Under the pieces are notes generated by a model, which made no database searches, had not been told where the DNA came from, and saw nothing but the letters and a program-made list of their open reading frames with translations. A program made the translations under genes and the position numbers. Source: Rebecca billardiae RCC1528 (taxonomy: Eukaryota > Protista > Haptophyta). From it: a DNA stretch of 64,000 bases. Location of the stretch: the NCBI GenBank assembly GCA_965240325.2, contig OZ251225.1, forward strand, positions 2,852,001 through 2,916,000. Reading direction: 5' to 3'. This document shows, piece after piece, positions 6,001 to 27,319 of the stretch. Each line of letters opens with the position of its first letter. Position 1 is the stretch's first letter.

Positions 6001-8823
6001 ATGTGCCGCAGTGGGCGCAGTGCTGGCACCTCTCGCACAAGCTGGCGGACCAGGGCTTCGACGGCTTCGCGCAGGAGATGGAGGGCAACGCGCAGGCGTG
6101 GGTCGAGTGCCTCGAGGTCGCCGAGCCGCACAAGGCCACGCTCCCCGGCAAGTGGGACGCGAAGCTCAGCTCGTTCTCGCGGATGCTCGTCGTGCGCGCG
6201 TTCCGCATGGAGAAGCTGACGCTCGCGTGCACCGACTACGTCGCGGAGCAGCTCGGGCGGGAGTACATCGAGGACCCGCCGCTCAACCTGCACGACGTGT
6301 TCCCCGACTCGACCAAGTCGACCCCGCTCGTCTTCGTCCTCTCCACCGGCGCCGACCCGATGTCCACCATCCTGCGGTTTGCGGCCGAGCGCGGGTACGA
6401 GGCGCGCACGCACTCCATCTCGCTCGGCCAGGGCCAGGGGCCGGTCGCGGACAAGCTCATCCAGGAGGCATGCCGCTCGGGCGACTGGGTGGTGCTGTCG
6501 AACTGCCACCTGGCCAAGTCGTGGATGCCCAAGCTCGAGAAGGTCGTCGAGTCCTTCCCCTCCTCCATCGACATCCACGACGAGTTCCGGCTGTGGCTCA
6601 CGTCGATGCCGGTCAACTACTTCCCTGTGCCCGTGCTGCAGACGTCCCTGAAGATGACCTTCGAGCCGCCCAAGGGGATCCGCTCCAACCTGAAGGGGAC
6701 GTGGTCGACGATCACGGAGGGGCAGTGGGACGCGTGCTCCAAGCCGCAGATGTGGCACAAGCTGCTCTTCGGCGTCACCTTCTTCCACGCCGTCGTGCAG
6801 GAGAGGCGCAAGTTTGGGCCTCTCGGATGGTGCGCGCACGCGCCCGCGCGCGCGCGCGCGCGCGAGCGCCCGCGCCCGCGTGAGCGCGCGCGTGCGCGCG
6901 CGGCTGCAAGCGGCTCGCACACGCGCGCGTTCCGAGGGGGGAGCGCGCCGCGCGGCTGCGTGCGCGCCCTCGCGCTGAGCCGCGCGTCCCGCGCGCGCGC
7001 GCCCGCCGCGCGCCGCAGGAACATCCGGTACGAGTTCAACACGACCGACCTCGAGGTGGCGATCGAGACGCTCAAGATGTTCCTCGACGAGCAGGACGAG
7101 ATCCCGTGGGACGCGCTGCTGTACGTGACGGGGCAGATCCACTACGGCGGGCGCGTGACCGACGACTGGGACCGGCGGTGCCTGATGTGCGTGCTGGGCA
7201 AGTACTACAGCCGCGAGATCCTCGAGGACGGTTACTTCTTCGACGAGTCGGGCGAGTACTACGCGCCCGACCACGCTGAGATGAACGTGGGCGGCGTGAG
7301 CGCCGTGCGCAAGTACGTGGAGGGCCTGCCGACGCAGGACGGCGTCGGGCTGTTTGGGCTGCACGGCAACGCGCGGATCACGTTCGAGACGCAGGAGACG
7401 CTCAAGCTGCTCGACACGATGACCTCGCTCCAGCCGCGCGAGTCCGGCGGCGCCGAGGGCGAGTCACCCGAGCAGCTCGTGTCTGCGCTGTGCGAGAAGC
7501 TCGGCGGGGACATGCCCGAGCAGCTGTCGCGCGACGAGGCGGGGCCGAGCACGTTCGAGCTGAACGAGAAGGGCGAGCTCGACTCGCTGCAGATCGTGCT
7601 GCTGCACGAGATGAGCCGCTTCAACAAGCTGCTCACGCGCGTCAAGGCGACGCTCGTGGACTTGCGAAACGTGCGCGCGCGCGCCGGCGCGCCGCCCGCG
7701 CGGGCGCGCGCGCTCGCGCCGCGCGGCGCGGCATGTCGGCTCACCCGCACGCGCCCCCCCGCCGCCGGCACCCGCGTTCGCGCGCGGCTGCACGCAGGCG
7801 ATCAAGGGGCTGGTCGTGATGAGCGGCGAGCTCGACGCCATGTTCGGCGCCATGCTCATCAACAAGGTGCCAGGTCTGTGGGAGAAGGTGCGCGCACGCA
7901 CGCACACGCGCACGCACGCACACGCGCACGCACGCACACGCGCGCACACGCGCGCGCGCGCCTGCCTTGGCACGCGCACGCACGCACGCGCACGCCTGCT
8001 TCGTGCACGCACGCGCCTGGCGCTTTGCGCCTGCCTCACGCGTGCCCGGCCCCGCGCCGTGCCGCCGCGTGCCCCGCAGGTGTCGTTCCTAAGCCTTAAG
8101 CCTCTCGGCTCGTGGGTGAAGGACCTGCAGACGCGCGTCGCCTTCTTCAGGGGATGGTGCGTGTGCACGCCTGCCAGTGCGCCGCGCGCCGTCTCTGAGG
8201 AGCCACGCGGCTGCTCCGCCTCCGCGCCGCGCGCGCGGCGCTGTCACTGGGGCGCGGCTCGGCGTGCTCACACCGCCCGCCCGCGCGCGCACGCGCGCCC
8301 GCCCGCCCTCTCTCTCGCGCTGCGCCGCGTCAGGCTGGTGCACGGCCGCCCGGCGTGCTTCAACATGCCGGCCTTCTTCTTCCCGCAGGGCTTCATGACG
8401 GGCGCGCTGCAGCTGCACGCGCGCAAGTACGCGATCCCGATCGACACGCTCAACTTCTCGTTCGCCGTGCGCAAGGAGGAGAGCTCGGAGGAGATCGAGA
8501 CCGCGCCGGACGACGGCGTCTTCATCTCGGGTTTCTTCATGGACGGCGCGCGGTACGACCGCGCAAAGGGCATGATCGAGGACTCGCTGCCAAAGGTGAT
8601 GACCGACACGATGCCGGTCATCCACTTCAGGCCAACCGTCAACTACAAGCGGGACGTGACGGACTACGAGTGCCCGCTGTACAAGACGGCGGTGCGCGCG
8701 GGCGTGCTCAGCACGACGGGCCAGTCCACAAACTTTGTCATCGCGGTCGACCTGCCGACAGACAAGGATCCCAACTACTGGGTGCGCATGGGCACGGCGC
8801 TGCTATGCGCGCTCTCAGACTGA
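1..8823 (+). CDS. DNAH6: Axonemal inner-arm dynein heavy chain, DNAH6-like, 5'-truncated by the window. Exons <1-6829, 7019-7670, 7798-7887, 8080-8156, 8334-8823
   Basis: P-loops GPAGTGKT, GPTGGGKT, GLTGVGKS and GVGGSGKQ; LDEFNRID; stalk coiled coil with microtubule-binding domain; C-terminal YECPLYKT. LDYKMMG and QQDHYDYGMRQVKSVLVMAG resemble the DNAH6 subfamily. Removing four GT-AG introns restores conserved text (PLGW|NIRYEF, DLRN|AIKGLVVMS, LWEK|VSFLSLKPL, FRGW|LVHG). Stop TGA at 8821-8823. Confidence 0.93.
6830..7018 (+). other. Spliceosomal intron (189 nt, in frame, no stop codon)
   Basis: GTGCGC...CGCAG, (GC)n-rich; it interrupts the conserved dynein motif GPLGWNIxYEF. Confidence 0.9.
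7671..7797 (+). other. Spliceosomal intron (127 nt)
   Basis: GTGCGC...CTCAC...CGCAG; removal restores the dynein reading frame. Confidence 0.9.
7888..8079 (+). other. Spliceosomal intron (192 nt, in frame, no stop codon), rich in CACG/CGCA repeats
   Basis: GTGCGC...CTCAC...CGCAG. Confidence 0.9.
8157..8333 (+). other. Spliceosomal intron (177 nt, in frame, no stop codon)
   Basis: GTGCGT...CTCAC...GTCAG. Confidence 0.88.
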
Positions 8824-18597: not shown

Positions 18598-21422
18598 TCA
18601 CGTCACGTCAGTCGACGATCGTTCGGGAGGGATTCCGCGGTCGTCAAGCTTGCTCTGCAGAGTTTGCTTGAGCAGCCGGCCCTCCTCGGTCTGCAGCACA
18701 GCGTTCTTGCTCGCGTTGAGGTCTTTGAACGCGTCGCGCACATCGCCGGCCTGAGGTAGCCGCATCGCCGAGGTGAGCGCCGTCAGAACCGCATGCCGGG
18801 CTGGGTCGGGCGGCGTGATCGAGGCGAACTCGTCCTCGAGCAGCAGCTTCTCCTTCTTCTCGTTGAAGTGCGCAAGCATCCGGTGTGCCTCCACCTGCAG
18901 GTGGTGCACCTTCACGTCGATGGCGTGAAGGTACGCGAGCGCCGTGCCGGGATGGCAGCCCTGCTCCGCGATCTCCGGGTCAAGCTCGCAGTCGATCTCG
19001 CTCACGACGCGCGTCAAGACGGGCGAGAGTGCGCTGATCGCATCGTGGATCTCCTGCACGGGGTCGAGAGGCTGGATGGAAAATGTCTCGCCAAAGTCGG
19101 TGGCGTCGTACTCTGCCTGCTGCTCCCTCATCTCGTCGAGCTGTGTCGCGGTCTGCTTCAGCCCGCGCACATCACGCTCGAGCTCCATGATGACCTGCTC
19201 GTTGTGGTTGAGCGCGTTCATCAGCGACGCGCTGTGCTCGTTGCGCTTCGAGAAGAACTCGAGGATCTGCTTCACGCTCTCCTGCAGCGCCGCGCGCCGC
19301 GGGGAACGCGAGTGACGGCACGGGAGCGAAGGTGCGGTGAACAACGCTGGTTGGGCCCGAGAAGCGCGTGCACACTGGCTCGCTCTGCACGCACCGGGGA
19401 CAGGTCGTTGCCGGCATCGACATGCGTCAAGATCTGCTTAAAATGCTCCTCGAGGAAGCGATGCGTGTCGCGGAGGTACCCGAAGCGCGACTCGCGCTTG
19501 TTGCTGGCGTCGCGAGTCTCCTGCAGGGGCCAGGGCACCCGCGCAGTTGGTGAGGGAGGTGCGCGCGCGGCTCTCGCGCGGCCGATGGCGCGCCGCACGC
19601 GCGTTCGTGTGCTGCGCAGCCGTGCGCGTAGCGCACCCGCAGGCGTCTGTAGCGCGCGAGGTTCGCATCCTGCGTGTTGCTTTCGAACGTGTCGGCGTTG
19701 TCATGCAGCTTCACGTCGAGCACCTGCGCCTGCTCCAGCACCTCGCGGATCTTGCTGCTGTACCATCGCTTTTCAATCCCGTATTCGTGCCGCAGCCGTT
19801 CCAGGCGCGACGACCACTTGGAGCTCTCGTCGAGCGTCGTGTGGGCGTAAGCGGCGAAGTGCTGCGCAAAGCGTTCGACGCGGCGGTTGGGCGCGTGGGG
19901 AGGAGCGCAGCGCGTGGCCGGAGCGCATGACTTGCGAGAGCTAGCGCGAGCAGCACGGCGCGGGCTGGGTGTGGCCGTGTGGCGCGCGCACCCGAATGTC
20001 AGCCGTCATGGCGTCGCTGCGCGTTTTCGCGACGTGGAGCTGTCGGCTGAGCGTGACGCGCTGCTTTCGGAGGCCGTTGATGATGTCCTTGAGCGACGAG
20101 TTCACAATGTGCGCCTCGCTCACGCGCGTCTCGTACGTCCCCACCTTCTGCGAGAGTTTTTGCAAGGTGATCTCCTCCTCCTGCGCCTTGCGGATCCGAC
20201 GCATCTCATCATCGCCGTGCAAGCCAGCTGCCTTTTCGAGCTCGCCGATCTCCACGCGCAGCACCTGCTCGCGCTCCTCCTGCATCTGCCGCTCGAGCTC
20301 CAAATTGTTCATCGCGTTCTTGTAGTAGTACAAGCGCCGCTCCTGCGCCTTGGCCGTCTGCTTCATGTGCTCGACCTCGTGCGCGGTCACGTTGCCGCCC
20401 TCGGAGGGCGCCGACGATGCGCGCGAGTTGCCAATGTCGGGCAGCGTGATGCCGGCGCGGCTGCGCATCTGGCTGCCCGACGTGCGCCGCGTCTGCTGCT
20501 GCTGCTTCTGGATGCGATTTACGCTCAGATGCGCCTGCACCTGGTCGATCAGCCCGAGCTTCCAGTCGGGGATGTCCTCTTTGGGGTGCACCGTCTTGAG
20601 CAGCTCGCGGAAGAACTCGCGCTTGGACGCCTCCTCGTTCAGCCCCCTCCTCGTGCCCTCGCCGATGCGCCTGCGCTCGGATGAGTCGCGCTCGCGATCA
20701 GCCGAGCGCTCCGCGCCGAGTCGCCGGGCGGGCTGCGTCTCCTGGGCTGCGCTGCCAGCTGGCTCACTCGGCACCACAGAAGCGTGCATCGTCACGACAG
20801 ACGATGCCCACGGCTGCGCCGCACGCGCCGCCGACTGCTCGGGCTGCGCCGGCTGCGGCGTGCGATGCGCGTCGGGCGACTTGGCCGCTCGCTCGTTGGT
20901 CTCCCGCCGCTCGCTGAGCGTGGGGCGCACGTTCATGTGCGCGAGCTGATCGTGTGCGCTGACGAGCTCTGTCCTCCGCCGGATCGGCCCGACCGGCCCG
21001 ACGGTCGCCACTAAGCTGTCTGCCTGCGCGACAACGTCCTCGAGCACATCGTCGTCCGCCAGCAGCCCGACCCCCATCTCTGTGCGGATCTGCAGCTCCA
21101 GCACCTGCCGCCCGTTGTACCGGTGAGCAATGCGCGCTTGCAGCTCGGCCGCGAGCTCGCGCACGCTCTTGCGGCTGTCGAAGGGCACGACGAAGAAGTC
21201 GCTCTCGACTTGGATGACGAAGCGCGTGCGACGCACCAGATCAACCTCCTCCTGCACCGGGGCTGCCGCCGTGGCAGCCGCCGCGGCGGCGGCAGCGGCT
21301 GCCCGCCGCGACCTCAACCGCGGCATGGGTCGATGTTGTGGAGCGCCCCCTGCTCGCCGCCCGCCGCCTGCAGAAGCCAGCAGAAACGTTCGACCTTGTC
21401 CCTTTGATCGTGGTCCGGTCAT
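18598..21422 (-). CDS. Coiled-coil protein resembling the outer dynein arm docking complex DC2/ODAD1 family, with an N-terminal Par3/HAL-N-like ubiquitin-fold domain. Introns 19991-19862, 19636-19521, 19394-19282
   Basis: Three GTGCGY...GCAG introns give one continuous frame. NSSLKDIINGLRKQR resembles the DC2 consensus N..LR..I..LRxER, and FFSKRNEHSASLMNALN resembles F...E..NF.LFNYVN. Start is uncertain (alternative ATG at 21326). Confidence 0.6.
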
Positions 21423-21873
21423 TGTCCTTGCTGTTGAGCAGAGTCCGGATGATGGCGCCCTTGCCCCTGCTGCCTCACTGCCTACAGTTTACTATGTTTT
21501 AACGTGCACACTTGGTTAAGGCGTGATTGACGCCATCCAACACTGCACAAAGACACCGCCACAAAACAGACCACACAGTACCGAACGAGTGCTCTGCTCT
21601 TGTGATCAGACGATGATTCTACTGTCGTCTTAATTAATCTAATTGATCGATCTGCTGTCTCCGTTATTCTAGATTCTAGCCAGTCTTACTGAACGAATAC
21701 TGTCTGAATACTGTCATACACGACCTACAGGGCTTAGCTACGTACGACATCTCGGAGAGACTGAGACAGACTGTCTTCTGCCAGACTGATGAGTCGTCGT
21801 CTGTGTCATCCTCGGCGACAGACTCACCGGCAGAACTTGGCTGCCGCCAAGAGCCACTGCCAGCCAAACTTGG

Positions 21874-24798
21874 TCAGGCGGGCGGCTCGCCGTCGTCATC
21901 TGCCGCGAGGCACTCCAGCATCATCGCCTGCGCGCGCTGCATGGCCGCAGCGCTCATCCGCACGGCCGTCCCTCGGGCGGTGGAGAAGCCGCAGCCACCG
22001 GCAATGGGCGTGCCGCTGCCGAGGCCAGCCGCTGCGAAAGCCGGCGCGGGCCCTGCGGACGGCGCGGCACCGACAGGAGCGCCGCGAGCGCACGACCCTG
22101 GCTGAGACACGCCGTGGCCAGGTTGGCTCGGCAGCTGCCGCGAGCATGGCCCTGCGCCGGTCGGCGAGCGTTTTCTCCCGCTGCCGGCGGGGGCCAGGGC
22201 CGCCTGACCGCCACAGCCGCTGCCCCGCGCGCCGCCGGGTGCCACGTTTGACGGCGCAAGGACCGCTGGCTCGCGCGACACAGCGGCTGGCTCGGGCGGC
22301 CGCACGCGCTTGCGCTCGTTCCCGACGCCGCGCGCGCAGGGTAGCACGTGCAGCACCGCGGCGCCGCCCTCGGCCGCACGGCCACCGTCGGCTCCGCGCC
22401 GAGCGGCGACGCACCACAGCGCCACGGCTGAGGCCGACGCCGGTGCTGCCGGGCCACCGGCGGCGGGTGCGCCGAGCAGGCCCCAGAGCCCAAGGGCGAG
22501 CCGCGGTGTCGCCACCGCGGGCTCGCGCACAAGCGCGACGCACTGGCGGCTGCGCACGTCCCACACGCACGCGCACGCAGCCCGCGCGCTCACGCCGACG
22601 AGCAGCTCAGCCGTCGAGCACAGCCCATCCCAGCGCAGCGCGCACGGCCGCGCGCCGCTCGGCTGATCGTGAGAGCCTGCCGCCGCTGGCGGTGCGGCTG
22701 CGGCTGCGCTCGGCGCCGCCTCGAGCATGGCTGGCGGGGGCTGGTACCGGCCGAGCGAGACGAGCGCATCCGACGAGCACGCGACGAGGTGCACGGCGTA
22801 CGGCGCGCATGCGCCCGCCCCGTCCGCCCCCGCTCCCAGCCGGCGCCAGAACGGACCGGCGGGCGGCGTCGGCGACTCAGCGTCGGCGCGCTCGGCTGCC
22901 GCTCCTGAGTCTCCGCGCGCGCGTGCGCTGTGCGCGCCCAGCCCGACATAGAAGGCGACGAGCGCGGCGCCGACGCCCCGGCGCGCGGCCGCGCGCGGCG
23001 CGGGCGTGGTCAGCCCCGCCGCCGCCTCGGTCCTCCTCGTCGGCTGCTCGCCGTGCGCTCGCCCAGCTGCCCACGGCGTGTGCGCACCCGCGCGCGCTGC
23101 GTGGGCGGCGGCGGCTTCGGCTGCGGCTGCGGCGCGCGAGAGCAGCCCCGCCTCGTGCGCGTCGTGCGGCACGAAGGGCGCGAAGACCACCGTCGCCTCC
23201 GCGTGCGCGGCGGGGCTCGGCATCGCCAGCTGGGCCGAAGGCCCGGCCGCGGCCCCGTCCGCAAAGCTCAGCAGCAGCGAGCCTCGCTCGTGGTCCCAGA
23301 GCGCCGCGCCGCGCGCGCACACTCCGAGTACCCAGCTCGGGCGCCAGCTGGGTACGAGCAGCGCGCACGCCGCCGGGCCCGGAGCGGCGAGGGCGGGCGC
23401 AGCGCTGCGCGCGGGGGCGTCGGGCGGATGCCCGCGCCGCACCGGCATCCACGGCGCCCGCGGCAGCTGCCGAGCCCGCAGCAGCGCGCGCGGCGCCACC
23501 CGCGCTCGGTGCGCCGGTGGCTGGGCAGGCCTCGTCTCCGGCTGCCATGGCTGCCACGCGCACACGGCGCACGGCGCGCTCGCAAGCACCGATCCGCCGA
23601 CGCCGGGCAGCGCGAGCTCCACGCACGGCGCTTGCGCGCCAGGCTCGAGGCCCGCCTCGGCCGCGGGCGCTGCGCCGCTCACGCGCACGACGGAGGTCCG
23701 GCTTCCCCCATCGATCTCACACACGGCGAGCGCGCAGCTCGCGGCTGACCTCGCGCCGACCGCGCGCGGCGCGCTCGGCGGGCGTGCAGACGCCACTTCG
23801 TCGGCGTCGGGGTCGGTGCACGCGAGCGCGAGCGCGAGCTCCACTCGCGCGCCTCGCCCGTCGGAGCCCTCGCCCGCTGCCGCCGCCTCGCCGTCACACG
23901 GCCCCAGCCCCAGCCCCACGCACACGAGTCGGGCGCCTGGCGCCGCCGCCACGCCTGCGTGTGCGGCCACGTCACGCAGCGGCACGCGGCAGATGTGCGA
24001 GGCGTGCGCGCCCGGCGCGGCGTGCGGGCACTGCCACAGGTCGACATGTAATGCCGTGGCCACGGCCACGACCCCTGCGCGCGCACACAGCGCCGCCACC
24101 GCGGGCTCGTGCGCACTCGGCTCGTCCGGCAGCCCAGCGCTCGCGGCACTCAGCTCGATGGCTGTGTGCGAGAAAAGGCGCGGTAGCTCGGCGGGACGTG
24201 GCGGAGCGGTAGATTCGAGAGCGTTCGGCCCATCGCCCGGCACTGCACATGCCGCCCCGCCGACGACGCTCGCCACGTGCGGCAGCGCGCATGCCGCGCG
24301 AGTCGGCGCTGAGGCCCCCGCCGGGCCGGTCGGCGCGGCACTCGGCGGCGCAGCTGGTGGATCGGGCACGTGAGCAGGGCGCTGAGACGGCGGGTGGGCG
24401 GAGCAGACCGGAGCCGCCTGCGGACACGCGCCCGACTCGCACACCTCAGCTTCGCGCTCTGGGCTCGGCGCAGCTTCAGCCAGCGTCATCGGCGCGAGCG
24501 GCGTGCCTGCCACCGCCATGTCCCGCTCGCCATCCTCGGGCGGAGCGAGGCCAAAGTACCGCGCCGGCTCTTGCTTGAGCAGCGCCGCGCGGCACTGCTG
24601 CAGGTGCCGCAGCAGCTCGCGCAGCTGCGTAGTGTGCTGCTCGCAGGCCTCGCCCATGAACGCCCCCGCCGTGGAGGCGAGCCGCTGCCCAAACCCAACG
24701 AGCGGTGGCCTCTCGCACACCGAGCCGGGGGCGGCTCCCAAGGGTCCGGATGGGCGCGTTCTGAGTCCGGGCCGGTGCAAGCTTTTTGCCTTTTCCAT
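21874..24798 (-). CDS. PALB2: PALB2-like protein (N-terminal coiled coil, degenerate WD40 propeller) with a C-terminal BRC repeat
   Basis: Collinear motif similarity to the PALB2 WD40 domain as I remember it: VAVATALHVDLWQ, ARLVCVGLG (PALB2 LVCVALG), AALWDHERGSLL (IVIWNLKTGQLL), AVHLVAC...LGRYQPPP (VFQLIVI...MLYCLPP), CVWDVRSRQCVALV (AIWDLLLGQCTALL). C-terminal GFSTARGTAVRMSAAAMQRAQAMM fits the BRC consensus. Start could instead be the in-frame ATG at 24942. Confidence 0.62.
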   Translation of the reverse strand: MEKAKSLHRPGLRTRPSGPLGAAPGSVCERPPLVGFGQRLASTAGAFMGEACEQHTTQLRELLRHLQQCRAALLKQEPARYFGLAPPEDGERDMAVAGTPLAPMTLAEAAPSPEREAEVCESGACPQAAPVCSAHPPSQRPAHVPDPPAAPPSAAPTGPAGASAPTRAACALPHVASVVGGAACAVPGDGPNALESTAPPRPAELPRLFSHTAIELSAASAGLPDEPSAHEPAVAALCARAGVVAVATALHVDLWQCPHAAPGAHASHICRVPLRDVAAHAGVAAAPGARLVCVGLGLGPCDGEAAAAGEGSDGRGARVELALALACTDPDADEVASARPPSAPRAVGARSAASCALAVCEIDGGSRTSVVRVSGAAPAAEAGLEPGAQAPCVELALPGVGGSVLASAPCAVCAWQPWQPETRPAQPPAHRARVAPRALLRARQLPRAPWMPVRRGHPPDAPARSAAPALAAPGPAACALLVPSWRPSWVLGVCARGAALWDHERGSLLLSFADGAAAGPSAQLAMPSPAAHAEATVVFAPFVPHDAHEAGLLSRAAAAAEAAAAHAARAGAHTPWAAGRAHGEQPTRRTEAAAGLTTPAPRAAARRGVGAALVAFYVGLGAHSARARGDSGAAAERADAESPTPPAGPFWRRLGAGADGAGACAPYAVHLVACSSDALVSLGRYQPPPAMLEAAPSAAAAAPPAAAGSHDQPSGARPCALRWDGLCSTAELLVGVSARAACACVWDVRSRQCVALVREPAVATPRLALGLWGLLGAPAAGGPAAPASASAVALWCVAARRGADGGRAAEGGAAVLHVLPCARGVGNERKRVRPPEPAAVSREPAVLAPSNVAPGGARGSGCGGQAALAPAGSGRKRSPTGAGPCSRQLPSQPGHGVSQPGSCARGAPVGAAPSAGPAPAFAAAGLGSGTPIAGGCGFSTARGTAVRMSAAAMQRAQAMMLECLAADDDGEPPA

Positions 24799-24940: not shown

Positions 24941-27319
24941 ATGACTGGCCACCTGACCCCGTCGACGGTGTACGCGCCGTCACCCACAACGCACCGGGGC
25001 GAGGCGACAAGCATGTCGATCCTACCCAAGGGTGACAAGCTCGTCTACCCCTCGGGCAAGCTCGTCGTCATCCGCTCGACGACTGATGCGCATCGCGCAT
25101 GGCTGTACACGCAGCACTCGTGCAACGTGCGTGTGCCACCGCGCGCTTGCCGATCGCGCCCGCAGCCGTGCGCGCGGAGGGTCTCAGTGGCGGGTCTGTG
25201 CTGACGCGCCCTCGGCACCGCGCCCGCCGCTCCCTCGCCTCGTCGGTCGGCCGCTCGCGACGCGGCCCGGCGCGCGCGCGTGACTCTGCGCCGCACGCAC
25301 GCAGGTGACCGCCGTCGCCGCGGCACCCAACGGCGAGTGGGTCGCATCGGGCGACGAGCGAGGGCAGGTGCGGATCTGGGGCATCATGCCGGAGCACACG
25401 CTCAAGCTCGAGACCATCGCGCTCGGCGGGAAGGTGCTCGACATCGCGTGGTCAGGCGACGGTCAGCGGCTGTGCGCTGTGGGCGAGGGCCGCGAGGCGT
25501 TCGGCAAGGTGTTCACGTGGGACTCGGGCAACTCGCTCGGCGCGATCGACTCGCACTCGAAGCGCATCATCTCGTGCTCCTTCCGCGCCGCGCGCCCCTT
25601 CCGCGTCGCCACCGGCTCGGACGACCTCGCCGTGAACTGGTACGAGGGCCCCCCGTTCAAATTCAAGGCGTCGCTGCGCGAGCACACGCGCTACCCAAAC
25701 TGCGTGCGCTTCTCGCCCGACGGAGAACATCTGGTCTCGGCGGGCTCGGACAACAAGCTGGTGCGGTACGACGGCAAGACGGGGCAGAAGTCCGGCGAGG
25801 TCGCCGCGACCGACGCGCACCTCGGCGCCATCTTCTCGTGCTCGTGGTCGTCGGACAGCAAGCACATCCTCACCGCGTCCGCCGACAAGACTGCGCGCAT
25901 CTTCGACGCCGCGACGCTCAAGCCGCTGCACACCGTCACCGTGACGGACAGCCCGGGGATCCAGGACATGCAGGTGAGCTGCTGCTGGGCCGGGAGCACG
26001 GCGATCACGCTCTCGCTCTCGGGCCGGCTCAACTTCGTCGACGCGTCCGCGGGCAAGGTGGTCTCCTCCATCATGGGGCACAACAAGGCCATCACGGCAC
26101 TCGGCGTCGATCTTGTGCACCACGCGCGGTACGAGCCGCGGTTCGCGACGGCGTCGTTCGACGGGCTGATGTGCGTGTGGGACACGAAGACCGGCGAGTG
26201 CCGGACCGTCGGCGGCAGGGGCCACGACAACGCCGTCGTCGGGCTCGCGGTCCTGCCAGGCGAGACGCTCGTGAGCGCGTCACTGGACCAGACCGTGCGC
26301 TTCACCTCACTCAGCGCGATGAAGGTGGTTGAGACCTCGACCATCCAGCTCGGTGCGCGCTCGCCGCCGCGCGCGCGAGGGCGCGTGCGCGCGCCGTGGC
26401 GCGGTGTGCCCGGCGCCGACGCCGGATCGGCCTGCCCGCTGCGCCGCGCTTGCTCACTCGCCACGTGTGCGCGCGCGTGCGTGCGCGCGCGCGTGGCCGC
26501 ACGCGGGCCCGGCGCGCGCCGCCACCGCCTTGGCCGCTCGCAGACGGCAGCGCGCGCGGTCTGTCCGCCATGGGCGAGCACGTGGCGGTCGTGAGCGACA
26601 AGTCGGTCTTCGTGATCGGCGGCGGCGGCAAGGTGAGCGCCAAGGCGGAGATCGGCGCGCCGCCCACCGCGGTCGCCATCTCGCCCGGCGGCAACGACGT
26701 CGCCGTCGGCCTCGAGAATGGCGAGATTTGGCTGTATGGCCATGACCTGGGTAAGCTGACCAAGAAGGGCGAGCCGCTGAAGAAGCACAGCGCGGAGGTG
26801 ACCGCGCTGGCGTTCTCGCCGACCGGCGCGCACCTCGCCTCGTGCTGCGCGGGGCGGAGCGTCTTCGCGTGGGAGCTCGCGTCGATGGCGCCCGTCTCGA
26901 CGTCGTGGGTTGCGCACAAGGCCAAGGTGACGTGTCTCGCCTGGTCGCCCTCGGGCAAGTACCTCGCCTCGGGCGGCGTCGACTCGTCGGTGATCGTGTG
27001 GTACATGGAGAAGCCGTCGGAGAACACCACGCAGAGGCTGGCGCACGACAACGGCGTCACCGCGATCGGCTTCGTGTCCGAGGACATGGTGATCTCCACA
27101 GGCCAGGTGCGTGCGCACGCACCTCGCGGCACGTTGACTCAGTCAGTCAGTCGGTGGGGGACGCGTCGGCAGTCGGGTGGCGCCGACGGCGCGCGCGCGC
27201 GCGCGCGGCATGGGCTACTCTCTCCTGCGCTTCTGGACTCACGCGAGTGACCCGCGACCGCCCCTCTGCGGTGTGCCCCGCAGGACGCGTGTGTCAAGAC
27301 ATGGTCGTTCAAGGCATGA
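24941..27319 (+). CDS. WDR1: WD40 actin-interacting protein 1 (AIP1/WDR1). Exons 24941-25126, 25305-26352, 26544-27106, 27284-27319
   Basis: Hallmarks APSPTTHRGE, VASGDERGQVRIW, DIAWSGDGQRL.AVGEGRE.FG, WDSGNSLG, RPFRVATGSDD...YEGPPFKF, GHNKAIT, WVAHKAKV, STGQ|DACVKTW. Three GT-AG introns restore the frame. Confidence 0.93.

What the first reader, a model, noticed from the sequence alone, without database searches (positions are those of the whole stretch)
21874..24798. PALB2-like WD40 protein carrying its own BRC repeat
Seen: at least five collinear PALB2-like WD40 motifs (including LVCVGLG and VWDVRSRQCVALV), an N-terminal coiled coil (QLRELLRHLQQCRAALLKQE), and at ~21910-21996 a C-terminal GFSTARGTAVRMSAAAMQRAQAMMLE that fits the BRC consensus F.TASG..V.VS...L.KA...F.E. 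Known: animal PALB2 bridges BRCA1 (coiled coil) and BRCA2 (WD40), and BRC FxxA motifs of BRCA2 bind RAD51; human PALB2 has no BRC repeat. Inference: this would be a deep-branching PALB2 able to engage RAD51 directly, a fusion that may shortcut BRCA2.
Basis: partly seen in the sequence, partly recalled or inferred. Interest (0 to 1): 0.85.

Follow-up and report, generated by a model that had tools for sequence, protein, structure and literature searches.

The report
WD40-like protein with BRC tail
A haptophyte alga encodes a protein with a probable WD40-type propeller whose tail ends in a BRC repeat, the RAD51-binding motif otherwise typical of BRCA2; related algae keep this tail, but nothing I could run shows the protein to be a PALB2 relative.

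Summary
The gene (window 24798-21874, minus strand, 974 aa, apparently intronless) looks real.

The C-terminal BRC repeat is confirmed:
- In a search of 1.84 billion proteins, the only non-self hits are BRC arrays.
- It carries both the FxxA module and the LFDE-like module.
- It scores far above shuffled controls.

Gene order gave three positional orthologues in other Pavlovales algae, each head-to-head with the AIP1/WDR1 gene. All four proteins end in a BRC-like motif followed by an acidic tail. The motif scores as a BRC in three; the fourth is degenerate.

The body is a sequence orphan. An AlphaFold model built from the orthologue alignment folds only its first half, as four-stranded blades, and that half matches hundreds of WD40 propellers. 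The propeller is therefore likely but only partly modelled.

The PALB2 label is not supported:
- Pfam PALB2_WD40 gives no hit, and no PALB2 chain appears in the PDB sequence or fold searches.
- The quoted "VWDVRSRQCVALV" matches ordinary WD40 proteins, the same pattern that Gbeta5 matches in the family profile.

Best reading: a Pavlovales protein that tethers RAD51 or DMC1 through one BRC repeat on a propeller scaffold. It resembles PALB2 in layout only. RAD51 binding is inferred, not tested.

The parts
21874..24798 (-). Coding sequence of the 974-aa protein P0001 (stop codon at 21874-21876), apparently a single exon
   Evidence: ORF list and the database protein P0001. Coding-type GC pattern stays in one frame throughout. 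The D. lutheri orthologue is annotated as an intronless 886-aa gene. The divergent AIP1/WDR1 gene starts about 140 bp upstream on the + strand.
24568..24693 (-). N-terminal helix (aa 36-77), a possible short coiled coil
   Evidence: It is the only confident element of the single-sequence AlphaFold model (helix 36-75, pLDDT 58-81). The hydrophobic positions are conserved in the D. lutheri and CCMP2436 orthologues.
24547..24564 (-). Conserved A-x-Y-[FY]-x-[VL] motif (ARYFGL, aa 79-84) directly after the helix
   Evidence: Ala and Tyr are invariant in all four orthologues (alignment A4).
24127..24546 (-). Pro/Ala-rich low-complexity linker (aa 85-224), probably disordered
   Evidence: Composition, no predicted structure, poorly conserved in alignment A1.
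22333..24126 (-). Divergent WD40-type beta-propeller body (aa about 225-822) with long Ala/Gly/Pro loop insertions; blade count not established
23260..23379 (-). Most conserved blade (aa 474-513, ...ALLVPSW...GVCARGAALWDHERGSLLLSF)
   Evidence: Densest run of invariant columns across the four orthologues (alignment A2). Weak local match to a Gbeta5 blade.
22522..22617 (-). Canonical-looking WD blade (aa 728-759, ...ELLVGVSARAACACVWDVRSRQCVALV)
   Evidence: Pfam Aladin propeller blade at E 0.04. PDB cwf17 for P0001 and Gbeta5 for the family profile, both through the generic 'VWD.RS..C' pattern. hhalign to AIP1 aligns only this blade.
22000..22332 (-). Gly/Pro/Ser-rich linker (aa 823-933) with basic clusters ERKRVR (828-833) and RKR (875-877), possible nuclear localisation signals
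   Evidence: Read from the sequence. Basic patches occur at the same place in the orthologues. The NLS function is inferred.
21910..21999 (-). Single BRC repeat (aa 934-963): FSTA at 938-941 (FxxA module), Gly943, Ser949, and MMLE at 959-962 (LFDE-like module)
   Evidence: Pfam PF00634 at 16.6 bits. Non-self hits in 1.84 billion proteins are BRC arrays only. Shuffle control. Fits the consensus GFSTA.G..V..S..AL..AK..F. Scores 34.8 bits against an HMM of 21 BRC repeats taken from three Pfam-confirmed arrays. BRC peptides are the top hits of the family profile in the PDB.
21877..21909 (-). Acidic C-terminal tail (aa 964-974, ...DDDGEPPA)
   Evidence: A run of Asp residues follows the BRC-like motif in all four orthologues (alignment A5).

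Best explanation
This is a real, probably nuclear protein found so far only in pavlovophyte haptophytes.

Its layout, from N to C terminus:
- a conserved helix;
- a disordered Pro/Ala-rich linker;
- a very divergent WD40-type beta-propeller with long low-complexity loops;
- a flexible basic linker;
- one complete BRC repeat, followed by an acidic tail.

Proposed mechanism, which is inferred and not tested. The BRC repeat binds a RAD51 (and/or DMC1) monomer. Its FxxA module would mimic RAD51's own oligomerisation motif. Its downstream hydrophobic/acidic module (MMLE, equivalent to LFDE in BRC4) would bind the second pocket. The protein would then tether the recombinase to whatever the propeller and the N-terminal helix bind. 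It would act as an adaptor or chaperone for RAD51 in homologous recombination.

Its layout resembles PALB2 with a BRC repeat added. Homology to PALB2 is not demonstrated.
For: Real gene:
- Coding-type codon GC pattern in one frame.
- No competing gene in other frames.
- Conserved head-to-head position next to AIP1/WDR1 in D. lutheri, Pavlovales sp. CCMP2436 and a metagenome contig.
- BLASTP against the D. lutheri neighbour gives E 1e-13 over 332 aa. Core identity to the three orthologues is 34-38%.

BRC repeat:
- Pfam BRCA2 repeat is the only hit in P0001 and in the D. lutheri protein, and the only hit in the CCMP2436 tail (E 0.0054, 0.0099, 0.11).
- The only non-self hits in 1.84 billion proteins are BRC arrays.
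- Shuffled peptides reach at most 11 bits, against 70-178 for the real one.
- An HMM built from 21 BRC repeats of Pfam-confirmed arrays scores best at the extreme C-terminus: 34.8 bits in P0001, 21.1 in CCMP2436 and 14.0 in D. lutheri. Shuffled tails reach at most 5.7.
- The family profile's best PDB hit is the BRC peptide 8c3n_B; 1n0w_B, BRC4 from the RAD51 complex, is also among its four hits.
- Arg at motif position 5 also occurs in repeats of a Pfam-confirmed array (FKTARGTAV and FSTARGNWV in P0005).

Propeller.

Helix.
Against: - No BRC hit reaches Pfam's gathering score of 20.3 bits.
- The metagenome orthologue's tail is degenerate and does not score as a BRC.
- Two orthologues have FxxG instead of FxxA. 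In tetrapeptides this lowers affinity about six-fold, although binding remains (PMC4855620).
- RAD51 binding is untested.
- The propeller is modelled with moderate confidence only in its N-terminal half (mean pLDDT 48). That model is of an orthologue, not of P0001, whose own single-sequence model failed (pLDDT 33).
- Pfam WD40 does not hit, and hhalign against an AIP1 WD40 profile is not significant.
- No RNA run was listed, so transcription and the intronless model are unconfirmed.
- The partner of the propeller is unknown.
Confidence: 0.62

Rival explanations
1. It is a true, highly diverged PALB2 orthologue that has acquired a BRC repeat. PALB2-type mediators would then predate animals. This one would bind RAD51 through its own BRC and BRCA2 through its propeller.
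For: The layout matches PALB2: an N-terminal helix, a long disordered region and a C-terminal WD40-type propeller. A BRC repeat ties the protein to RAD51 biology. From my own recollection of the human PALB2 sequence, which is a lead and not a test, several blades look collinear with it.
Against: - Pfam PALB2_WD40 never hits, on the whole protein, on tiles or on the orthologues.
- No PALB2 chain is found by phmmer or by the family profile against PDB sequences at E up to 10, while Gbeta5 and cwf17 are found.
- PALB2 is absent from the top 50 of both fold searches and from the language-model neighbours.
- The quoted motifs are generic WD patterns.
- Phylogenetic profiling finds BRCA1-PALB2 co-evolution only in animals (PMC6396423).
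- No paper in the library describes a PALB2 homologue outside animals.
Confidence: 0.2
2. It is the lineage's non-canonical BRCA2, or a replacement for it: a mediator that carries a BRC repeat, lacks the canonical DNA-binding domain, and uses a propeller instead.
For: BRCA2 orthologues without the DNA-binding domain exist in mosses and Drosophila (PMC12412785). Here one BRC repeat is the only recognisable recombination motif.
Against: No BRCA2 helical, OB or Tower domain is detected. The BRC repeat lies at the extreme C-terminus, after a folded domain. In canonical BRCA2 the BRC repeats precede the DNA-binding domain (my own knowledge). No BRCA2 with a propeller is known to me.
Confidence: 0.1
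3. It is a DCAF17-like substrate receptor of a CUL4-DDB1 ubiquitin ligase that uses the BRC repeat to capture RAD51 for ubiquitylation.
For: DCAF17 and the plant family DUF7899 are the nearest language-model neighbours of the propeller region in two orthologues (scores 0.90-0.91, 169-175 shared features). P0001 has a WDxR motif (WDVR, 746-749).
Against: Pfam DCAF17 and DUF7899 give no hit. The Arg of WDxR is not conserved in the orthologues (VWDALT, VWAVGS, VWSLDS). The language-model scores are in the range the tool calls a lead only. No DDB1-binding helix was identified.
Confidence: 0.06
4. The BRC-like tail does not bind RAD51. It is either a convergent or decaying short linear motif with another or no function, or the ORF is not expressed as annotated.
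For: All Pfam scores are below threshold. The tail in the metagenome orthologue is degenerate. Ala varies with Gly. No RNA evidence was available.
Against: The full-length, gap-free match covers both BRC modules. Hits in 1.84 billion proteins are exclusively to BRC arrays. The position is conserved across four orthologues that share only 34-38% core identity. Shuffles never approach the observed scores.
Confidence: 0.1

Closest known systems
BRC repeats of BRCA2 (Pfam PF00634; BRC4-RAD51 complex, PDB 1N0W)
   Same: The roughly 30-residue motif has both modules: G-F-S-T-A-x-G (FxxA), then V..S..A[LM]..A, then a hydrophobic pair followed by Glu (MMLE, compared with LFDE). It aligns without gaps to repeats from Pfam-confirmed BRC arrays. 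The BRC peptides 8c3n_B and 1n0w_B are among the four PDB hits of the family profile.
   Different: There is a single copy. It lies at the extreme C-terminus of a propeller protein that has no BRCA2 helical, OB or Tower domains. It scores below Pfam's cut-off (16.6 against 20.3 bits). Arg replaces the usual Ser at motif position 5, and two orthologues have FxxG.
PALB2 (partner and localizer of BRCA2)
   Same: The overall layout is shared: an N-terminal helix (a coiled coil in PALB2), a long disordered middle and a WD40-type propeller. A role around RAD51 is presumed for both.
   Different: No detectable sequence, profile or preferential fold similarity to PALB2. The propeller here is followed by a tail of about 150 aa carrying a BRC repeat, whereas in PALB2 the propeller ends the protein and there is no BRC repeat (my own knowledge). 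PALB2 is known only from animals (and my own knowledge).
Generic WD40 beta-propellers (Gbeta, beta-TrCP, WDR4, UTP4, Apaf-1 WD40)
   Different: Pfam WD40 does not hit, and a profile comparison with AIP1 is not significant. Long Ala/Gly/Pro insertions roughly double the usual size of the domain.
DCAF17 / plant DUF7899 propellers
   Same: They are the nearest neighbours by protein language-model features for two orthologues.
   Different: There is no HMM hit to either family, and the WDxR motif is not conserved. The scores are within the tool's lead-only range.
Non-BRCA2 RAD51 binders with FxxA or BRC-variant motifs (RECQL5 BRCv, FIGNL1, SWSAP1, MMS22L)
   Same: A RAD51-binding short motif is carried by a protein that is not BRCA2. 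The named examples are from my own knowledge; FIGNL1 and SWSAP1 appear in a title listed.
   Different: As I recall, those proteins carry only an FxxA core or a variant motif. This one has a complete two-module BRC repeat that retrieves BRCA2 arrays in a database-wide search.

Membership tests
BRC repeat (Pfam PF00634) | FxxA module with the conserved Thr/Ser at position 3 and Gly at position 6 | tested here: met
   F938-S-T-A941-R-G943. Phe and Gly are invariant in the four orthologues and in the reference repeats.
BRC repeat (Pfam PF00634) | Second module (LFDE-like hydrophobic pair plus acidic residue) about 21 residues after the Phe | tested here: met
   M959-M960-L-E962 aligns with L-F-D-E. 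The orthologues have LL, LF-D and MY at the same place. The two-module concept comes from PMC2800230.
BRC repeat (Pfam PF00634) | Score at or above Pfam's gathering threshold (20.3 bits) | tested here: not met
   12.3 bits on the whole protein and 16.6 bits on the last 95 aa. Orthologue tails score 15.8 and 12.4 bits.
BRC repeat (Pfam PF00634) | Reciprocal similarity to BRC arrays beyond chance | tested here: met
   The only non-self hits in 1.84 billion proteins are BRC arrays, with E down to 3.8e-6. Shuffle controls.
BRC repeat (Pfam PF00634) | Conservation in orthologues | tested here: met
   The motif is at the C-terminus in all four orthologues, significant in three and degenerate in the metagenome one.
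BRC repeat (Pfam PF00634) | Binds RAD51 or DMC1 | not testable with these tools
   There is no complex prediction or binding assay here, and the species' RAD51 was not retrieved.
PALB2 | PALB2-type WD40 domain (Pfam PF16756) | tested here: not met
   No hit at E up to 10 for the whole protein, for sub-ranges, for 80-aa tiles or for the three orthologues.
PALB2 | Sequence or fold similarity to the solved PALB2 WD40 structure (PDB 2W18 / 3EU7; that these entries are in the copy searched is my own knowledge) | tested here: not met
   PDB sequence searches with single sequences and the family profile find cwf17, Gbeta5 and BRC peptides, but not PALB2. PALB2 is not in the top 50 of Foldseek or VIA-align. 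Both lists are flat, so it is not excluded.
PALB2 | N-terminal coiled coil that binds BRCA1 and self-associates | tested here: inconclusive
   A conserved helix is predicted. Coiled-coil formation and partners were not tested, and no similarity to the PALB2 coiled coil was examined.
PALB2 | Propeller pocket binds the BRCA2 N-terminal peptide | not testable with these tools
   The species' BRCA2 was not available, and no complex modelling is offered.
WD40 beta-propeller superfamily | Four-stranded blades arranged as a propeller | tested here: inconclusive
WD40 beta-propeller superfamily | Match to a WD40 repeat profile (Pfam PF00400) | tested here: not met
   No PF00400 hit. There is only one Aladin-propeller blade at E 0.04, and hhalign to AIP1 gives probability 1.7.
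BRCA2 | DNA-binding domain (helical domain, OB folds, Tower) | tested here: not met
   No Pfam hit to any BRCA2 domain other than the repeat.
DCAF17 / DWD-box CRL4 receptors | DCAF17 profile (PF15802) or a conserved WDxR motif | tested here: not met
   No PF15802 hit. WDVR is present in P0001, but the Arg is absent in all three orthologues.

The most novel reading that the evidence does not exclude
The protein is the haptophyte counterpart of PALB2, or a PALB2/BRCA2 functional hybrid: an ancient coiled-coil plus WD40 recombination mediator that loads RAD51 through its own BRC repeat. PALB2-type scaffolds would then predate animals, and BRC repeats would have moved between recombination mediators.
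Probability: 0.18. Interest if true: 0.85.

Novelty: new variant of a known kind. Interest (0 to 1): 0.62.

Why it matters
BRC repeats are treated as the signature of BRCA2. The literature searches here found no description of a complete two-module BRC repeat on a propeller protein. That is an absence in one open-access library, not proof of novelty.

A conserved BRC repeat on the tail of a WD40-type scaffold would show that the RAD51-binding module can be attached to other scaffolds. It would give a compact, testable RAD51 adaptor in haptophytes, a group whose recombination machinery, to my knowledge, is little studied.

If the propeller proves to be PALB2-related, the origin of the BRCA1-PALB2-BRCA2 axis would move far outside animals. 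If it does not, the protein is an independent solution with the same layout.

Either result is obtainable with a peptide pull-down and a deep-profile comparison.

Tried and rejected
1. The word-index homologue search found only the protein itself, both with the whole protein and with the propeller region at E up to 10.
2. Two metagenome scans, one with the protein and one with the core alignment, found no relatives.
3. Single-sequence AlphaFold of P0001 failed (pLDDT 33).
4. Pfam on 80-aa tiles gave only an Aladin blade and a low-complexity KAAG1 hit.
5. Weak PDB hits to CIMIP2B and an ATPase c-subunit are Pro/Arg-rich or Gly/Ala-rich low-complexity matches, and I discarded them.
6. Other reading frames and the opposite strand give no family hit.
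7. No RNA run was listed for the locus.
8. hhalign of the family against an AIP1 WD40 profile was not significant.
9. The DCAF/WDxR idea was dropped because the Arg is not conserved.
10. The contigs of P0003 and P0005 gave no taxonomic context.
11. I did not type a PALB2 sequence from memory for a direct comparison. It has no reference here and would be long typed text, so a direct P0001-PALB2 alignment was left out.
Full report
**The gene**

The region holds one long minus-strand ORF (25038-21874). The public protein collection has its 974-aa product starting at the Met at 24798 (P0001). These are exactly the finding's coordinates. P0001 is known only from one recent sequencing run.

The DNA is about 79% G+C, so long ORFs arise easily in every frame. 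Three things argue for a real gene:
- This frame keeps the coding pattern, with GC lowest at codon position 2, through most of its length. It never shifts frame, which argues against introns unless each is a multiple of three.
- No other frame or strand gives a family hit.
- The gene sits head-to-head, about 140 bp apart, with an AIP1/WDR1 gene.

The protein is 25% Ala, 12% Pro and 11% Gly.

**The organism**

The AIP1 neighbour is 62% identical to the Diacronema lutheri protein and 60% identical to that of Pavlovales sp. CCMP2436.

**The BRC repeat**

- Pfam's only hit for the whole protein is the BRCA2 repeat at 1017-1039 of the ORF. It scores E 0.12, or E 0.0054 and 16.6 bits on the last 95 aa. 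Both are below the 20.3-bit cut-off.
- An exhaustive phmmer search of 1.84 billion representatives returned four non-self proteins, all matched through residues 928-964. Three of them (P0002, P0004, P0005) hold 6-16 Pfam-confirmed BRC repeats, including an insect BRCA2. The fourth, P0003, holds four BRC-like repeats that Pfam scores below its cut-off.
- The peptide GCGFSTARGTAVRMSAAAMQRAQAMMLEC aligns without gaps to those repeats. It carries the FxxA module, the conserved Gly and Ser, and a hydrophobic pair plus Glu where BRC4 has LFDE.
- The unusual Arg at position 5 also occurs in repeats of a Pfam-confirmed array (FKTARGTAV and FSTARGNWV in P0005).
- Shuffled versions reach at most 11 bits, against 70-178 for the real peptide.

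**Orthologues**

The body of the protein found nothing by sequence search, so I used gene order. The gene next to AIP1, in the same head-to-head arrangement, is:
- an 886-aa intronless gene in D. lutheri (identical on three other contigs);
- a 941-aa ORF in CCMP2436;
- a gene in two pieces across a 10-N gap on a metagenome contig.

None of these has a Pfam domain on record. BLASTP of P0001 against the D. lutheri protein gives E 1e-13 over 332 collinear residues. The core is 34-38% identical among the four.

All four proteins end in a BRC-like motif followed by Asp residues:
- D. lutheri: GFRTGAGSKLALSSVALERAKRLLLDDDE
- CCMP2436: GFKSAGGSERALSAAALERARMLFDGLDDDDA
- metagenome contig: GFVTGRGSAIALRTDVLKQITSMYSGVLDD

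An HMM built from 21 BRC repeats of the Pfam-confirmed arrays P0002, P0004 and P0005 finds its best site at the C-terminus of each of the three proteins in which the tail scores as a BRC. It scores 34.8 bits in P0001, 21.1 in CCMP2436 and 14.0 in D. lutheri, against at most 5.7 for shuffled tails. The metagenome tail is too degenerate to score.

Pfam's BRCA2 repeat is also the only hit in the D. lutheri protein and in the CCMP2436 tail. A profile of the family finds, as its best PDB match, the BRC peptide 8c3n_B. Its four hits also include 1n0w_B, which is BRC4 from the RAD51 complex.

Two orthologues have FxxG rather than FxxA. In tetrapeptides this costs about six-fold in affinity but does not abolish binding, and some archaeal RadA proteins carry Gly there (PMC4855620).

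**The N-terminus**

The one confident element of the single-sequence model is a helix at 36-75. Its hydrophobic positions and a following A-x-Y-[FY]-x-[VL] motif are conserved. A coiled coil is plausible but not shown.

**The body**

- The single-sequence AlphaFold model failed (pLDDT 33).
- With the five-row orthologue alignment, the CCMP2436 propeller region reached pLDDT 60-80 over residues 30-250. These fold as successive four-stranded sheets. The rest stayed poor (mean pLDDT 48).
- That model gives 242 Foldseek hits in the PDB at E <= 0.001. The 50 listed are almost all WD40 propeller proteins.
- Language-model neighbours of two orthologues are all beta-propellers, with DCAF17 and plant DUF7899 nearest.
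- At sequence level only two blades look canonical. They match an Aladin blade, cwf17 and Gbeta5.
- Pfam WD40 does not hit, and hhalign against an AIP1 profile is not significant.

A WD40-type propeller is therefore likely, but it is only partly modelled. The model is of an orthologue, and the blade number is not established.

**PALB2**

Every resource here that should contain PALB2 failed to pick it out:
- Pfam PF16756, on the whole protein, on tiles and on the orthologues;
- PDB sequences, with single queries and the family profile at E up to 10;
- the top 50 of both fold searches.

The fold lists are flat and HMMER is weak at this divergence, so remote homology is not excluded. From my own recollection of human PALB2, several blades look collinear with it. 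That is a lead only. I did not type that sequence, because it has no reference here.

The literature library holds no PALB2 homologue outside animals. Phylogenetic profiling finds BRCA1-PALB2 co-evolution only in animals (PMC6396423).

**Mechanism**

Shown here:
- a conserved protein with an N-terminal helix and a probable propeller;
- a flexible basic linker;
- a complete BRC repeat that is conserved at the C-terminus.

Inferred:
- The BRC repeat binds monomeric RAD51 or DMC1 as BRCA2 repeats do (two-module model, PMC2800230).
- The basic clusters act as nuclear localisation signals.
- The propeller and helix bind partners, so that the protein tethers the recombinase to them.

Other readings are scored in the rivals: a BRCA2 substitute (moss and fly BRCA2 lack the DNA-binding domain, PMC12412785), a DCAF17-like ligase receptor (weakened because the WDxR Arg is not conserved), and a non-functional motif.

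**Limits**

- No RNA run was listed.
- The family currently has four members from one algal order.

**Verdict**

The BRC observation is right and is strengthened by its conservation in orthologues. The propeller is probable. The PALB2 label is an analogy of layout, not a demonstrated membership.

Noticed in passing
window 24941-27250 (+ strand); L002:10001-12124; L003:10001-13054; L007:3449-5156: An AIP1/WDR1 (actin-interacting protein 1) gene lies head-to-head with the finding's gene, about 80-140 bp apart. The pairing is conserved in D. lutheri, Pavlovales sp. CCMP2436 and a metagenome contig, which suggests a shared bidirectional promoter. This synteny is what revealed the orthologues.
   Followed up: yes
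L003:6084-9677 (-): The NCBI gene model in Pavlovales sp. CCMP2436 has 1046 aa and runs to 6084. The continuous ORF stops at 6852, right after the BRC-like motif, as in the other species. The annotated 3' end probably splices past the true stop.
   Followed up: partly
L007:2187-2196: The metagenome scaffold has a 10-N gap inside the orthologue. The same residues (TWA) are encoded on both sides, in different frames. It looks like an overlap joined as a gap, which splits the gene into two called proteins (403 and 471 aa).
   Followed up: partly
P0003 (L008:482-1396): A 304-aa metagenomic protein carries four tandem BRC-like repeats with a period of about 58 aa (CGFSSAKGQKI.TS.AAIEKAKK). Pfam barely recognises them (E 0.0012). 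The last repeat is followed by LDDDE, like the Pavlovales tails. It may be a fragment of a protist BRCA2. Its origin is unknown.
   Followed up: partly
L002:12225-22124: In D. lutheri, the genes beyond AIP1 include a protein kinase, an SMC5/6 Nse1 subunit and a protein of more than 2600 aa with weak FHA and faint WRNIP1-type zinc-finger hits. Several genome-maintenance genes therefore lie close together. I did not check whether this holds in the window.
   Followed up: no
window 19941-21422 (-): The downstream neighbour is a 493-aa ORF with a charged, probably coiled-coil C-terminal half and no significant Pfam hit. In D. lutheri the gene in the corresponding position is a Cupin_8/JmjC gene on the other strand; in CCMP2436 a Cupin_8/JmjC gene lies further off at the end of the fetched locus. 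Synteny therefore appears to end on this side.
   Followed up: no
window 21500-21870: G+C drops from about 79% inside the gene to 30-55% immediately after its stop codon. This sharp boundary is consistent with a 3' UTR or intergenic region.
   Followed up: no
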